DNA of 63,212 nt, counting the filler, from Octopus bimaculoides (lineage: Eukaryota), in NCBI RefSeq assembly GCF_001194135.2. It is 9 parts of 6 records of this genome, joined end to end, with 100 filler letters (N's around TTAATTAATTAA, not from the genome) between each part and the next. Parts side by side here need not be neighbours in the genome. Positions count along the whole stretch, not along the records: positions 16,346 to 22,138 come from NC_068992.1; 8 more parts are not named here. The stretch is one strand, 5' to 3'. A program made the position numbers and the translations under genes. Positions 16,346 through 22,310 of the stretch are shown here, one piece after another (positions within the stretch are counted from its first letter, which is position 1; each line of letters opens with the position of its first letter). A model generated the notes under the pieces. It was not told where the DNA came from. It did no database searches and worked only from the letters and a program-made list of their open reading frames with translations.

Positions 16346-16347
16346 GA

Positions 16348-19300
16348 AGTCGATTATCAGAAAGAGAGAGTACTATCAGATCGATATCAGATGGGCGAAG
16401 TCAGATATCGGAAACAATGAGTATTCCCAGTTCAATAACGGACCGTCGGAGTGAAATATCTGAAAGAGAGAGTATTCCCAGTACAATGACGGATCAACGA
16501 AGTCGATTATCAGAAAGAGAGAGTACTATCAGATCGATATCAGATGGGAGAAGTCAGATATCGGGAATAATGAGTGTTCCATCTGTTGAAAAGCTTCACA
16601 CTGTTTCATTCCAAGAACTGCCAGATAAAACGTCAACAGTTATCGAGATTTCTACTCCGGTCACAGAACACCTGGAAATGAGAGACAGAGATCAACAATC
16701 AAGCATAGAGGAAAAACCATACCTGTCAGTAACGGAACTGTTAGATCTAAGACAAAAGAAAAAGAGTTTAGACGATTTATTAGCAAAGTATGGTATTGAA
16801 ACACGCAGCGATGTGATTGACAGTATAAGAGGAAGCTTATCAAGAGAAAGTAGGCATCTACTAACTGCAGAAAGAAAGAGTAAATCTCTATTGGATATAC
16901 AGACTCCGTATTCCACAGAAACTGATGGACAAATGTCTGAGAGAGAATTGCTTGGTTTAGAGAGAGAACAGTCAATTTCTTTAGCTGGAAAAAAGAGTAA
17001 ACACAGTTCAATACCAGAAGATCTAGATAAGTTGTCTGCAAGAGAAAGTGCACATAGTCTTGTGGCAGATAGACTGAGTGAAGTATACAAAAAGGATAGC
17101 ATTCTCAGTTCAATAACAGACCAACGAAGTCCATTATCACGAAGAGAGAGTGTTCTTAGTTTGCTAGATCAGCGGAGTCGTATATCAGGACGAGAGAGTA
17201 TTGCCATTTCAAAGCCATCTGAGCAGAGTCTATTATCAGAAAAAGAGAGTATTCTCAGTCCGGTAGCTGACCAGAGAAGTGAGATATATGGAAAAGAGAG
17301 TATTCCTAGTTCAATAGCTGACCAACAAGAACGATTGTCAGAAAAAGAGAGTAGTCTCAGTTCAGTAGCCGACCAGCAGAGTCAAATTACTGTACGAGAG
17401 AGTATTCGCAGTTCAATCGCAGACCAACGAAGTCAAATATCTGAGCGAGAGAGTATTCCTAGTTCAACAACAAGAGAACAAAGTGAAATATCGGCAAGAG
17501 CAAGTACTCCTAGTTCAATATCAGAACAACAAAAATTATTATCAGAGAGTATTGTTAGTTCGGTTCCATATCAACGAAGTCACATATATGAGAGTGAAAG
17601 TTATGTCAGCTCTGTACCAGACCATCTGAGTCGAATTTCAGCAAGCGAAAGTGTTCCGAGTTCAATAATAAAACAACAAAGTCAGATGTCAGGAAGGGAA
17701 AGTATTCACAGTGCAATACCATCTCATCTAAGCCATATTTTCCTTAGTGAGAGTTCTCGCAGTTCTGTTGCAGATCAGCGGAGTCAGATATCTGGAAGAC
17801 AGAGAACGCCTACATCAATAATTGACCAAAGGAGTCAGATGTCTGGAAGAGAAGGTACTCCGAGTTCCATAATTGACCAACAGAGTCAAATATCCGGAAG
17901 ACAGAGAACTCCTACATCTATCATTGACCAACGAAGCCAGATATCTGGAAAAGAGAGTACTCATAGTACAATAACTGAAAAAGAGAGTCTTATATATGGA
18001 AGAGAAAGTACACCCAGTGTTGTTACTGAGCAGCAGAGCCAGATATCGGGAAGATATATCGCTGGTTCAATGGTAGACCAACGAAGTCAGATATCATCAA
18101 GAGAGACTACACCTAGATATACGCCGGATAAACGTAGTCAAATATCAGGAAAAGAGAGTACTCCTAGTACAACAACTGACAAACTAAGGAGTAGTTCTAG
18201 CTCAGCAAGAAGTACTTCTGGCTCAGCAAGTGACCTGCGGAGTCAGAGATCTGGGAGAGACAGTACTAGAACGCCTAGTTCAATTAGTGACAAGCGGAGT
18301 CAGGTATCTAGCAGAAAGAGTACTCCTAGTTCGGTAAGTGAACAACGGAAAAGGATATTTGGAAGAAAGAGTACTCCTAGTTCGATAACTGACAAACGAA
18401 GTCCAATTTCTAAGAGTGTGAGTACTGAAACTACGAAATCAGACCGGCGGAGTCGAATAAGTGTAAAAAAGAGTACACCTAGCTCAAAGGTTGACCAAAA
18501 GAGTCAGCTGTCACAAAGGGAGAGTATTCCAAGTTCAGCGATAGAACAAAGGAGTAAAAAATCTGAAAGTGGAAGTACAGTTAGTTCAACACATGACCGA
18601 TGGAGTCAGATATCAGAGAAGGAAAGTATTCTAACTTCAATTACAGAACAACAAAGTCAGGTATATGAAAGAGAGAGTATTCCCAGTACAATACAACAGC
18701 AACAAAGTATATCAGAAAGAGAGAGTAGTATTCGGTCGATATCAGATGAACGAAGTCAGATATCTGGAACAACGGGTATTCCCAGTTCAATAACAGACCG
18801 TCCAAGTGATGTTTCTGAAAGAGAGAGTATTCCCAGTACAATAGCAGATCAACGAAGTCGATTATCAGAAAGAGAGAGTACTATCAGATCGATATCAGAT
18901 CAGCGAAGTCAGATATCGAGGACAATGAGTATTCCTAGTTCAATAACAGAGCGGTGGAGTGAAATATCAGAGAGAGAGAGTATTCCCAGTACACTAGCAG
19001 ATCAACGAAGTCGATTATCAGAAAGAGAGAGTACTGTTCGATCGATATCAGATCAGCGAAGTCAGATATCGGGAACAAAGAGTATTCCCAGCTCAATAAC
19101 GGACCGTCGGACCGAAATGTCTGAAAGAGAGAGTATTCCCAGTACAATGACGGATCAACGAAGTCGATTATCAGAAAGAGAGAGTGCTATCAGATCGATA
19201 TCAGATGAACGAAGTCAGATATCGGGAACAATGAGTATTCCCAGTTCAATAACGGACCGTCGGAGTGAAGTATCTGAAAGAGAGAGTATTCCCAGTACAA

Positions 19301-20217
19301 TGACGGATCAACGAAGTCGATTATCAGAAAGAGAGAGTACTATCAGATCGATATCAGATGGGCGAAGTCAGATATCGGGAACAACGAGTATTCCCAGTTC
19401 AATAAGAGACTGGCCAAGTCAAGTATTACAAACACAGAGTGTCGTAAGCTGGATGCCAGACCAACGAAGTCGATTATCAGAAAGGGAGAACATTCTCACG
19501 TCAGCATACGATCGACGAAGTCAGATATCTAAAAAAACGAGTTTTCCAAGTCCAATAACAGATTGGCGGAGTGAAACATCTGAAAGACATAGAATTGTAA
19601 GTTTGACACCAGAACAGCGTAGTCGATTACAAGAAACGGAGAGCATTGTCAGGTCCATATACGATCAGCGAAGTCAGGTATCTGGAATAATGAGTATTCC
19701 AAGTTCAATAACAGACTGGCGGAGTGAAGTATCAGAAAGGGAAGGTATTCCCAGTACAATAACAGATCAACAAAGTCGATTAACAGAAAGAGAGAGTACT
19801 GTAAGCTCGATATCAGATCGGCGAAGTAAGATATCGGAAGCAACAAGTGTCCCCAGTTACATACCGGAACGGTGGAGTGAAGTATCTGAAAGAGAGAGTA
19901 TTTCCAGTAAACTACCAGACGAACGCAGTCGATTATCAGAGAGACAGAGTACTATTAGATCGATATCAGATGAGCGAAGTCAGATATCGGGAACGATGAC
20001 TATTCCCAGTTCAGTAACGGAGCGACTGAGTGAAATATCTGAAAGATGGAGTAGTCCTAGTACAATAGCAGATCAACGAAGTCGATTATCAGAAAGAGAG
20101 AGTACTATCAGGTCGATATCAGATGGGCGAAGTCAGATATCGGGAACAATGAGTATTCCCAGTTCCGTAACGGACCGCTGGAGTGAAGTATCTGAAAGAG
20201 AGAGTATTCCCAGTACA
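16348..20217 (+). CDS. Large internal exon (partial) of a Ser/Arg/Glu-rich tandem-repeat protein: 51-aa repeats, then a ~160-aa unique segment, ~32 diverged 17-aa monomers and ~10 51-aa higher-order repeats
   Basis: 1290 codons without a stop between two N gaps. The frame is already open upstream of the ATG at 16417, so that ATG is not the start. Unit: SERESTIRSISDGRSQI/SGTMSIPSSITDRRSEI/SERESIPSTMTDQRSRL. All length variants seen are in-frame. Confidence 0.85.
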
Positions 20218-20921
20218 NNNNNNNNNNNNNNNNNNNNNNNNNNNNNNNNNNNNNNNNNNNNNNNNNNNNNNNNNNNNNNNNNNNNNNNNNNNNNNNNNNN
20301 NNNNNNNNNNNNNNNNNNNNNNNNNNNNNNNNNNNNNNNNNNNNNNNNNNNNNNNNNNNNNNNNNNNNNNNNNNNNNNNNNNNNNNNNNNNNNNNNNNNN
20401 NNNNNNNNNNNNNNNNNNNNNNNNNNNNNNNNNNNNNNNNNNNNNNNNNNNNNNNNNNNNNNNNNNNNNNNNNNNNNNNNNNNNNNNNNNNNNNNNNNNN
20501 NNNNNNNNNNNNNNNNNNNNNNNNNNNNNNNNNNNNNNNNNNNNNNNNNNNNNNNNNNNNNNNNNNNNNNNNNNNNNNNNNNNNNNNNNNNNNNNNNNNN
20601 NNNNNNNNNNNNNNNNNNNNNNNNNNNNNNNNNNNNNNNNNNNNNNNNNNNNNNNNNNNNNNNNNNNNNNNNNNNNNNNNNNNNNNNNNNNNNNNNNNNN
20701 NNNNNNNNNNNNNNNNNNNNNNNNNNNNNNNNNNNNNNNNNNNNNNNNNNNNNNNNNNNNNNNNNNNNNNNNNNNNNNNNNNNNNNNNNNNNNNNNNNNN
20801 NNNNNNNNNNNNNNNNNNNNNNNNNNNNNNNNNNNNNNNNNNNNNNNNNNNNNNNNNNNNNNNNNNNNNNNNNNNNNNNNNNNNNNNNNNNNNNNNNNNN
20901 NNNNNNNNNNNNNNNNNNNNG

Positions 20922-22136
20922 ACTATTCCCAGTTCAGTAACGGAGCGACTGAGTGAAATATCTGAAAGATGGAGTAGTCCTAGTACAATAGCAGATCAAC
21001 GAAGTCGATTATCCGAAAGAGAGAGTACTATCAGATCGATATCAGATTTACGAAGTCAGATATCGGGAAGAATGAGTATTCCCAGCTCAATAACGGACCG
21101 TCGGACCGATATGTCTGAAAGAGAGAGTATTCCCAGTACAATGACGGATCAACGAAGTCGATTATCAGAAAGAGATAGTACTATCAGATCGATATCAGAT
21201 GGGCGAAGTCAGATATCGGAAACAATGAGTATTCCCAGTTCAATAACGGACCGTCAAAGTGAAATATATGAAAGAGAAAGTATTCCCAGTACAATAGGAG
21301 ATCAACGAAGTCGATTATCAGAAAGAGAGAGTAGGATAAGATCGATATCAGATGGGCTAAGTCAGATATCGGGAACAATGAGTATTCCCAGTTCAATAAC
21401 GGACCGACGGATTGAAATATTTGAAAGGGAGAGTTATCCAAGTACCATAGCAGACCAGCTAAGTCGATTATCAGAAAGAGAGAGTACTATCAGATCGATA
21501 TCCGATGAGAGAAGTAAGATATCCGAAGCAATGAGTATTCCAAGTTCCAGAACAGAAAGCCGAAGTGGATTATCTGAAAGAGAGAGTATTCCCGGTACTA
21601 TAGCTGATCAGCGAAGTCGATTATCAGAAAGAGAGAGTACTATCAGATCGATATCAGATGGGCGAAGTCAGATATCGGCAACAATGAGTATTCCTAGTTC
21701 AATAGCAGACCAGCGAAGTGAAATATATGAACGAGAGAGCATTGCACGTTCGGTGCCAGACCAACGAAGTCCATATTCTGATAGGGAGCGCATAATCAGA
21801 TCGATATCAGATGGGCGAAGTAAAATATCTGAAACAATGAGTATTCCCAGTTCAATAACAGACCGACTGAGTGAAGTATCTGAAGGAGAGAGTATTCCAA
21901 GTACAATGACGGATCAACGCAGTCGATTATCAGAAAGAGAGAGTACTATCAGATCGATATCAGATCAGCGAAGTCGGATATCGGGAACAACGAGTACCCC
22001 CAGGTCTGTAACTGACTGGCGGAGTGAAGTATCAGAAAGAGAGAGTACTCCCGGTACAGACCAACGAAGTCGATTATCAGAAAGAGAGAGTACTATCAGA
22101 TCGATATCAGATCAGCGAAGTCAGATATCGGGAACA
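20922..22136 (+). CDS. Continuation of the same 51-aa repeat exon after an N gap (partial)
   Basis: 405 codons open from the first full codon after the gap to the next gap, with about 8 further 153-bp units. The frame offset relative to 16348-20217 is attributable to the estimated gap length. Confidence 0.85.
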
Positions 22137-22310
22137 ACNNNNNNNNNNNNNNNNNNNNNNNNNNNNNNNNNNNNNNNNNNNNTTAATTAATTAANNNNNN
22201 NNNNNNNNNNNNNNNNNNNNNNNNNNNNNNNNNNNNNNCAATCCAAACATGAACAACTAAATATATGTATATATATATATATATATATAGTCAATCCAAA
22301 CATGAACAAC

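What the first reader, a model, noticed from the sequence alone, without database searches (positions are those of the whole stretch)
16348..22136. Giant exon encoding a hierarchical 17-aa / 51-aa repeat protein
Seen: at least 1695 codons with no stop, made almost entirely of a 17-aa monomer (consensus about S-x-R-E-S-I-P-S-S-I-x-D-Q-R-S-Q-I). In the youngest part, three monomer types alternate as a 153-bp higher-order repeat. There is no recognisable folded domain and no resemblance to a family I know. Both ends run into gaps, so the true size is larger. Inference: a lineage-specific structural or scaffold protein whose coding array evolves like satellite DNA.
Basis: partly seen in the sequence, partly recalled or inferred. 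Interest (0 to 1): 0.85.

Follow-up and report, generated by a model that had tools for sequence, protein, structure and literature searches.

The report
Orphan serine-rich 17-residue repeat protein
This is a real protein-coding stretch made of about 90 copies of a 17-amino-acid, serine-rich unit, with younger copies grouped in threes; it has no detectable relatives or known fold, so it is an ordinary kind of lineage-specific repeat protein whose function is still inferred.

Summary
The left contig (16348-20217) has 1290 stop-free codons and the right contig (20922-22136) has 405. The other five frames carry 14-104 stops. About 90 monomers of 17 aa (consensus D-Q-R-S-Q-I-S-E-R-E-S-I-P-S-S-I-T) fill all but a 164-codon non-repeat segment. 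Three monomer types (A/B/C) alternate as a 153-bp unit, with 10.2 and 8.0 copies on the two sides of the gap.

As written, the 703-N gap puts the two frames out of phase. The repeat register requires a gap of 86+153k bases, which restores the frame; 698 is the nearest such value.

The array is coding, not neutral satellite DNA. pN/pS is about 0.47, differences concentrate at third codon positions, and 11-23 stops are expected under neutral decay against none seen.

No Pfam, PDB or homologue match was found among 1.84 billion representative proteins. AlphaFold gives no globular fold (pTM 0.2), only non-amphipathic helices bounded by prolines.

The best reading is an orphan, non-globular, serine-periodic spacer or scaffold region, probably heavily modified on serine. 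The source organism, exon boundaries, expression and function are untested. Interest is modest.

The parts
16348..20217 (+). Open reading frame of the left contig: 1290 codons, no stop, cut by the piece edge on the 5' side and by the assembly gap on the 3' side
16346..16575 (+). Upstream block of higher-order-repeat type monomers (partial B, then C, A, B, partial C). It is 96% identical to 19160-19394 and 93% to 21154 onwards
16576..17067 (+). Non-repeat segment of 164 codons in the same frame. Its 3' half shows faint x-R-E-S relics by eye. AlphaFold predicts helices, with pLDDT 80-92 for about 16720-16840
   Evidence: 0 of 2000 shuffles give an open + frame
17068..18645 (+). Older, degenerate 17-aa monomers (about 30), differing 23.6% from the consensus, with in-frame indels giving spacings of 45, 48, 57, 102 and 105 nt
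18646..20217 (+). 153-bp (51-aa) A-B-C higher-order repeat array, left part, 10.2 copies
20218..20920 (.). Assembly gap of 703 N. The repeat register predicts a true length of 86+153k bases (698 is the closest), which would join the two frames
20921..22138 (+). 153-bp A-B-C higher-order repeat array, right part, 8.0 copies. The open frame is 20922-22136 (405 codons), cut by the piece edge

Best explanation
The piece is a fragment of a genuine protein-coding gene with no detectable relatives. It is one long uninterrupted reading frame, at least 3.9 kb and about 5.8 kb (about 1928 codons) if the gap keeps the repeat register. It encodes about 90 or more copies of a 17-residue unit, D-[QR]-R-S-x-[IL]-S-[EG]-R-E-S-[IT]-[PI]-S-[ST]-I-[TS]. 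An old, diverged block of monomers (17068-18645) is flanked by arrays in which three monomer types (A DRRSEISERESIPSTIA, B DQRSRLSERESTIRSIS, C DGRSQISGTMSIPSSIT) were amplified together as a 51-residue unit. Unequal recombination or replication slippage in 153-bp register is the inferred mechanism. Purifying selection keeps the frame open and preserves Asp1, Arg3, the serines at 4, 7, 11, 14 and 15, and the aliphatic residues at 6, 12 and 16. The product is charge-balanced: 25% Ser, 12% Arg, 11% Ile, 9% Glu, no Cys and one Asn. It is predicted to have no globular fold. Inferred, not shown: it acts as an extended spacer or scaffold region whose regularly spaced serines (one every 3-4 residues, many in R-x-S, R-S or S-x-x-D/E contexts) are dense sites for modification. 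Phosphorylation is the more likely modification. The number of units sets the length and valency of the region.
For: Open frame: 1290 + 405 codons without a stop, against 14-104 stops in every other frame. Neutral-decay simulations expect 22.7 stops (minimum 10 in 2000 runs) in the 55 full monomers, and 11.0 stops (0 of 3000 runs with none) in the degenerate block. Substitution pattern: pooled pN/pS is 0.47 among 16 higher-order units, and pairwise differences per codon position are 0.17/0.15/0.27. Counting distinct variants gives 56 synonymous against 39 expected, with no such excess in the two control frames. The degenerate block differs from consensus at 59/90/147 sites by codon position. 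Per-position codons show free third bases under a fixed residue: Ser7 is TCA29/TCT24/TCG17/TCC3, Asp1 is GAT37/GAC31, and Pro13 uses CCC/CCT/CCA/CCG. All length changes between monomers are multiples of 3, because the frame survives spacings of 45, 48, 57, 102 and 105 nt. The non-repeat segment is open in the same frame (0 of 2000 shuffles). The higher-order repeat is confirmed. There is no fold or family: Pfam nothing above cut-off, PDB none, AlphaFold pTM 0.20-0.21. Orphan status. Composition and motif counts.
Against: There is no transcript, peptide or orthologue evidence of any kind. The gene's ends, start codon, signal peptide and exon boundaries lie outside the piece. Frame continuity across the gap is inferred from the repeat register, not read. 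The pN/pS and stop tests treat repeat copies as partly independent lineages, and gene conversion could distort them. Selection is only moderate (about 0.5-0.6). Ser4, Ser11 and Ser14 are almost always AGT (72-77 of about 84 at Ser4 and Ser11, 50 of 84 at Ser14), so part of the conservation could be at the DNA level or reflect recent common descent. The modification and scaffold role rests on composition alone. Single-sequence AlphaFold predicts helices with pLDDT up to 90, so 'disordered' is not established. The upstream repeat block could be a chimeric assembly join.
Confidence: 0.7

Rival explanations
1. It is the central tandem-repeat domain of a secreted, mucin-like O-glycoprotein. The conserved Ser/Thr would carry glycans, and copy number would tune glycan load, as in lineage-specific mucins that arise by gain of exonic repeats.
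For: It has a large uninterrupted repeat-coding frame with no conservation outside the lineage, and Ser/Thr are the best-kept residues. Ser+Thr is 34% in the repeats. This pattern is described for novel mucins in PMC9417175. The N-terminus, where a signal peptide would sit, is missing, so secretion cannot be excluded.
Against: Proline is only 4.3%, and Ser greatly exceeds Thr (25% against 8%). About 30% of residues are charged and 10.6% are Ile, which is unlike PTS domains. Only 8 of 151 100-residue windows reach about 40% Ser+Thr with 5% Pro (the thresholds are recalled from memory). No VWD or SEA domain was found in the piece. Serines sit next to Arg/Glu, which from general knowledge is disfavoured by GalNAc-transferases.
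Confidence: 0.15
2. It is a non-coding minisatellite or satellite array whose unit happens to lack stops in one frame. The long open frame would be a by-product of amplification, not a gene.
For: A 51-bp unit is divisible by 3, so amplifying a stop-free unit gives a long open frame automatically. The best database 'hit' (P0001) is exactly such a spurious ORF over a perfect 51-bp minisatellite. No homologue or expression evidence exists.
Against: Copies have diverged 20-38% yet show no stop, against 11-23 expected. Differences are biased to third positions, and the synonymous excess appears only in the open frame. All indels are in frame. The 164-codon non-repeat segment is open in the same frame.
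Confidence: 0.03
3. It is a coding-derived array that is no longer a functional gene, or was never an expressed one. Examples would be a recently pseudogenised copy, or an ORF carried by a repetitive or mobile element.
For: Selection is only moderate (about 0.5-0.6). The protein is absent from all protein collections searched. The locus is fragmented by gaps.
Against: There is no stop in 1695 codons, including an old block at about 24% divergence from consensus. There is no similarity to transposon or viral proteins.
Confidence: 0.07
4. Part of the architecture is an assembly artefact. The repeat block upstream of the non-repeat segment and the order of units around the gap would result from collapsed or chimeric short-read contigs. 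On this reading the true gene has a single array on one side of the unique segment.
For: 16346-16575 is 96% identical to 19160-19394 and switches to unique sequence inside a monomer. The locus contains a gap of estimated length, and both contig ends lie in repeats.
Against: The duplicated blocks are not identical (4-7% different). The join keeps the reading frame. The suffix/prefix test gives no true overlap.
Confidence: 0.2

Closest known systems
Nebulin simple repeats and 7-module super-repeats (from general knowledge)
   Same: The coding array is hierarchical. A short module is repeated, and a fixed set of diverged module types is then amplified together as a higher-order unit. Module number sets the length of the protein.
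   Different: There is no sequence or Pfam match to nebulin repeats. Here the module is 17 aa in triplets, not 35 aa in sevens. There is no SDxxYK actin-binding motif. Nebulin's modules are spread over many exons, whereas here the frame is uninterrupted.
NBPF Olduvai (DUF1220) triplets (from general knowledge)
   Same: Three related coding repeat types are amplified as a three-member higher-order unit in a lineage-specific way.
   Different: Olduvai units are about 65 aa, each encoded by an exon doublet, and belong to a Pfam family. There is no match here.
Lineage-specific mucins formed by exonic repeats (PMC9417175)
   Same: Both show species-restricted tandem repeats in a large coding block, with Ser/Thr retained while other positions drift, and copy number as the evolvable variable.
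   Different: The composition fails PTS character: Pro is 4.3%, about 30% of residues are charged and 10.6% are Ile. Secretion is unknown.
Involucrin and other repeat proteins with an ancestral diverged block plus a 'modern' homogenised block (from general knowledge)
   Same: An old degenerate repeat region lies next to younger, more uniform repeats of the same ancestry, in one open frame.
   Different: The repeat sequence is unrelated (Gln-rich 10-mers in involucrin). There is no homology.
Alpha-satellite-type higher-order repeats
   Same: Diverged monomers (62-64% identical between types) are organised into a higher-order unit that is the unit of amplification.
   Different: This array is under protein-level purifying selection, its units are only 65-96% identical (mean 80%), and it shows no local homogenisation gradient.

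Membership tests
Non-coding satellite DNA with higher-order repeats | Head-to-tail monomers grouped in a higher-order unit | tested here: met
   There are 153-bp units made of three 51-bp monomer types. Identity is 72-86% within a type and 62-64% between types.
Non-coding satellite DNA with higher-order repeats | No protein-coding constraint (neutral substitution pattern, stops accumulate) | tested here: not met
   pN/pS is 0.47, there is third-position bias, and 0 stops are seen against 11-23 expected.
Mucins (PTS-domain proteins) | Repeat domain rich in Pro, Thr and Ser | tested here: not met
   Ser+Thr averages 32% per 100-aa window and Pro is 4.3%. Only 8 of 151 windows reach about 40% Ser+Thr with 5% Pro. 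The thresholds are recalled from memory, not taken from a paper read here.
Mucins (PTS-domain proteins) | Signal peptide, and VWD or SEA domains | not testable with these tools
   The N- and C-termini of the gene lie outside the piece. No such domain is present within it.
SR / RS-domain proteins | Runs of consecutive Arg-Ser dipeptides, usually with an RRM | tested here: not met
   There are 83 RS and 32 SR dipeptides, but they are isolated, about 1-2 per monomer, and not in runs. No RRM is present in the piece.
Proline-punctuated amphipathic helical repeats (apolipoprotein, perilipin or LEA type) | Helices between prolines with a high hydrophobic moment at 100 degrees | tested here: not met
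   AlphaFold places helices between the SIPS prolines. The hydrophobic moment of the 16 long inter-proline segments is 0.01-0.18, at or below the shuffle mean of 0.17-0.20 in every case. There is no dominant 3.6-residue periodicity.
Secretory acidic phosphoproteins (Fam20C substrates: caseins, SIBLINGs, shell-matrix-type) | Abundant S-x-E / S-x-pS motifs and a strongly acidic net charge | tested here: not met
   There are only 10 S-x-E and 1 S-x-D in 1695 residues, and net charge is about 0. S-x-pS was not counted.
Nebulin / Olduvai (known coding higher-order repeat families) | Match to the family's repeat profile | tested here: not met
   No Pfam family reaches its cut-off, and the best hit is 21 bits against a cut-off of 27. 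The similarity is architectural only.

The most novel reading that the evidence does not exclude
It could be the founding member of a new family of serine-periodic repeat proteins in which the 51-residue triplet, not the 17-residue monomer, is the selected structural unit. Type B has lost the proline, so each triplet would give one segment of about 33 residues and one of about 16 residues between prolines (a long helix, a hinge, a short helix and a hinge in the AlphaFold model). This would form a regular, modifiable rod or spring with a lineage-specific cellular role.
Probability: 0.1. Interest if true: 0.55.

Novelty: new member of a known kind. Interest (0 to 1): 0.3.

Why it matters
If expressed, this is a large protein that annotation pipelines and protein databases have missed, and a clean example of satellite-style higher-order amplification operating inside a reading frame under purifying selection. 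Cases like this help in studying how repeat proteins grow and how short-read assemblies break within them. Lineage-specific tandem-repeat, low-complexity proteins encoded by large open frames are common in eukaryotes. Without an organism, expression data or a phenotype, the finding opens no long-standing question.

Tried and rejected
- **Contig overlap at the gap.** The best suffix/prefix overlap (220 nt) has 16 clustered mismatches, so these are paralogous units, not an overlap.
- **Homology searches, all negative.**
  - Pfam.
  - Word-indexed search with the whole left ORF and with the non-repeat segment.
  - Full HMMER scan of 1.84 billion representatives: 13 hits, all repeat-against-repeat matches to unrelated proteins (leucine-rich-repeat-like bacterial surface proteins, a ZP-domain protein and others). 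None touched the non-repeat segment.
  - PDB sequences.
  - Metagenome contigs, twice; GTDB genomes; viral contigs.
- **The single GTDB 'hit' (L001).** It is a 23-residue chance match that ends in a stop.
- **Best HMMER hit, P0001.** It shares the 17-residue period and 34% identity. It is a spurious ORF over a perfect 51-bp minisatellite on a eukaryote-like metagenome contig, has no serine, and has no DNA similarity to the piece. Rejected as chance.
- **Amphipathic-helix (apolipoprotein-like) reading of the AlphaFold helices.** Rejected on hydrophobic moment.
- **Fam20C-type, RS-domain and mucin readings.** Motif counts and composition do not fit.
- **Other negatives.** Exact-product look-ups of the two minus-strand ORFs found nothing. 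Rfam found nothing. Repeat peptides do not occur in the paper library, and literature searches for a matching described protein found none.
- **Not run.** No fold search was run, because a pTM of 0.2 would make any match meaningless.
Full report
**What is there**

The piece consists of two contigs, 16346-20217 and 20921-22138, separated by 703 N.
- The left contig is open in one frame only: 16348-20217, 1290 codons, 0 stops. The other five frames carry 46-104 stops.
- The right contig is also open in one frame only: 20922-22136, 405 codons, 0 stops. The other frames carry 14-31 stops.

The translation has four parts:
- 16346-16575: a short block of well-conserved monomers.
- 16576-17067: a non-repeat segment of 164 codons.
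- 17068-18645: about 30 diverged 17-residue monomers.
- 18646 onwards: a regular 51-residue pattern that continues beyond the gap.

Tandem Repeats Finder reports 51-bp periodicity and two 153-bp arrays, with 10.2 copies at 80% matches and 8.0 copies at 81%, both without indels. A monomer HMM gives 91 hits. The consensus is GATCAACGAAGTCAAATATCTGAAAGAGAGAGTATTCCCAGTTCAATAACA, which translates to DQRSQISERESIPSSIT.

**The gap**

As written, the frames are out of phase: 703 mod 3 = 1, and a gap length of 2 mod 3 is needed.

The left contig ends after residue 15 of a type A monomer, on a codon boundary. The right contig begins with the last base of the Met codon at residue 10 of a type C monomer. 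Its first 93 nt are identical to 19998 onwards, and identity is 92.7% over 220 nt.

Keeping the 153-bp register therefore requires 86+153k missing bases. Every such length is 2 mod 3, so it restores the frame. The value 698 (k=4) is 5 nt from the estimate, and with it the frame would be about 1928 codons.

The contig ends do not truly overlap. The 16 mismatches cluster in the second half of the 220-nt match, so these are paralogous units. Continuity is thus plausible and self-consistent, but it is inferred, not read.

**Higher-order repeat**

The three monomer types are:
- A: DRRSEISERESIPSTIA
- B: DQRSRLSERESTIRSIS
- C: DGRSQISGTMSIPSSIT

Nucleotide identity is 72-86% within a type and 62-64% between types. 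The 16 complete units are 65-96% identical, with a mean of 80%. Neighbouring units are no more alike than distant ones (0.806 against 0.803).

A few blocks are 93-96% identical over long distances:
- 19102 matches 21096.
- 20020 matches 20943.
- 16346-16575 matches 19160-19394.

This fits occasional block duplication or conversion in register. It does not fit the tight homogenisation typical of young satellites.

**Coding or chance**

A 51-bp unit that is open in one frame gives a long open frame for free, so I tested for constraint. All tests point the same way.
- Pooled pN/pS among the 16 units is 0.47. Mean pairwise differences per codon position are 0.17/0.15/0.27.
- Counting each distinct variant once gives 56 synonymous changes against 39 expected. 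The two control frames show no excess (32 against 37, and 29 against 32).
- In the old block, differences from consensus fall 59/90/147 by codon position. Neutral decay to the same divergence predicts 11.0 stops, and 0 of 3000 simulations had none.
- For all 55 full-length monomers the expectation is 22.7 stops, with a minimum of 10 in 2000 runs.
- Codon tables per monomer position show free third bases under a fixed residue. Ser7 is TCA29/TCT24/TCG17/TCC3, Asp1 is GAT37/GAC31, and Pro13 uses all four codons.
- The frame survives spacings of 45, 48, 57, 102 and 105 nt, so all indels are multiples of three.
- The non-repeat segment is open in the same frame, which happened in 0 of 2000 shuffles.

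I conclude that the array has evolved as protein-coding sequence under moderate purifying selection. One caveat applies: repeat copies are not independent lineages, so these figures are indicative rather than exact.

**What the protein looks like**

- Composition: Ser 25%, Arg 12%, Ile 11%, Glu 9%, Thr 8%, Pro 4%. There is no Cys and one Asn. Net charge is near zero in every block.
- Best-conserved positions, in both old and young monomers: Asp1, Arg3, Ser4 (95-96%), Ser7, Ser11, Ser14/15, and the aliphatic residues at 6, 12 and 16. Serine or threonine therefore recurs every 3-4 residues.
- Motif counts: 134 S/T-x-x-D/E, 94 R-x-S/T, 83 R-S, and only 10 S-x-E.
- No Pfam family reaches its cut-off, and no PDB sequence matches the non-repeat segment.
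- Single-sequence AlphaFold gives pTM 0.20-0.21, meaning no compact fold.
  - In the array it draws one helix of about 30 residues and one of about 13 residues per 51-residue unit, bounded by the SIPS prolines of types A and C. pLDDT is 55-90.
  - In the non-repeat segment it draws helices with pLDDT 80-92 around 16720-16840.
- The long inter-proline segments are not amphipathic. Their hydrophobic moment is 0.01-0.18, at or below the shuffle mean of 0.17-0.20. Hydrophobicity shows no dominant 3.6-residue periodicity.
- The safe statement is that the protein is non-globular, extended or flexible, possibly with transient helices.

**Relatives**

None was found.
- The word-indexed search found nothing with the whole left ORF or with the non-repeat segment.
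- A full HMMER scan of 1.84 billion representative proteins gave 13 hits at E ≤ 0.001. All are repeat-against-repeat matches to unrelated proteins, and none lies on the non-repeat segment.
- The best hit, P0001, shares the 17-residue period. It is an ORF call over a perfect 51-bp minisatellite on a eukaryote-like contig, contains no serine, and has no DNA similarity to the piece.
- Scans of metagenome, GTDB genome and viral contigs found no relative. The one GTDB match is a 23-residue chance hit.
- Rfam finds nothing.
- The repeat peptides do not occur in the paper library.

The source organism could not be determined.

**Interpretation**

Shown: a real coding tandem array with 17-aa / 51-aa hierarchy, purifying selection, no known domain, and no detectable homologue.

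Inferred:
- Amplification by unequal exchange in 153-bp register.
- A role as an extended spacer or scaffold whose regularly spaced serines are modified.

I favour phosphorylation over O-glycosylation for three reasons. Proline is low, charged residues flank the serines, and composition mostly fails PTS character (8 of 151 windows pass). The mucin-like alternative, described for lineage-specific mucins in PMC9417175, cannot be excluded without the N-terminus.

The non-coding satellite reading is strongly disfavoured. A chimeric assembly at 16576 remains possible.

**Verdict**

The kind of object is familiar: a lineage-specific tandem-repeat, low-complexity protein with a coding higher-order repeat. 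Architectural parallels include nebulin super-repeats, Olduvai triplets, involucrin and novel mucins. The family itself is new to the databases searched. Interest is modest at 0.3.

Noticed in passing
window 16661-17102, minus strand: The non-repeat segment also has two long open runs on the opposite strand, of 124 and 134 codons in two frames. Only 14 of 2000 mononucleotide shuffles give even one run of 125 codons or more. This is probably a side effect of the purine-rich (60%) codon structure of the sense strand. Neither product is on record.
   Followed up: partly
window 16346-16575 against 19160-19394: The block of repeat units upstream of the non-repeat segment is 96% identical to units 2.8 kb downstream. 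It switches to unique sequence inside a monomer, after S-V-P-S. This is either long-range conversion between two arrays or a chimeric contig join.
   Followed up: partly
monomer positions 4, 11 and 14 throughout 17068-22138: Three conserved serines are almost always AGT (77 of 83, 72 of 85 and 50 of 84), with very little AGC. Ser7 and Ser15 use all TCN codons freely, and Asp1 splits GAT/GAC about evenly. This uneven synonymous freedom is unexplained. Codon preference, mutation bias or a DNA/RNA-level constraint are possible causes.
   Followed up: no
window 18186-18230: A short Ser/Ala-rich micro-repeat (21-bp period, 2.1 copies, partly palindromic) encodes SSSSSARSTSGSAS and interrupts the 17-residue pattern in the old block.
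   Followed up: no
window 16346-22138, many sites: The string GTATTCC[ACT]AG occurs 28 times, once in most type A and type C monomers (GT, then a pyrimidine run, then AG). Donor-like and acceptor-like sites repeated at multiples of 51 nt could allow in-frame removal of whole monomers by splicing. This is pure speculation. The only strong donor-like site is GGTAAGT at 18333, about what chance predicts.
   Followed up: no
L002 6568-7977 (ENA contig ctg34235l, sample ERZ21930236): A perfect 51-bp minisatellite was called as a 469-aa protein (P0001). It has a 17-residue unit, TLIQGLHRTPTLIMDME, that aligns at 34% identity with the RTPTSIID monomers at 17773-17976. It lies on a eukaryote-like contig carrying a lone Cpn60_TCP1 fragment. 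I judged it a chance match.
   Followed up: yes
whole ORF: Asn (1 in 1695) and Cys (0) are almost absent, and Phe is very low (0.3%). There are no N-glycosylation sequons.
   Followed up: no
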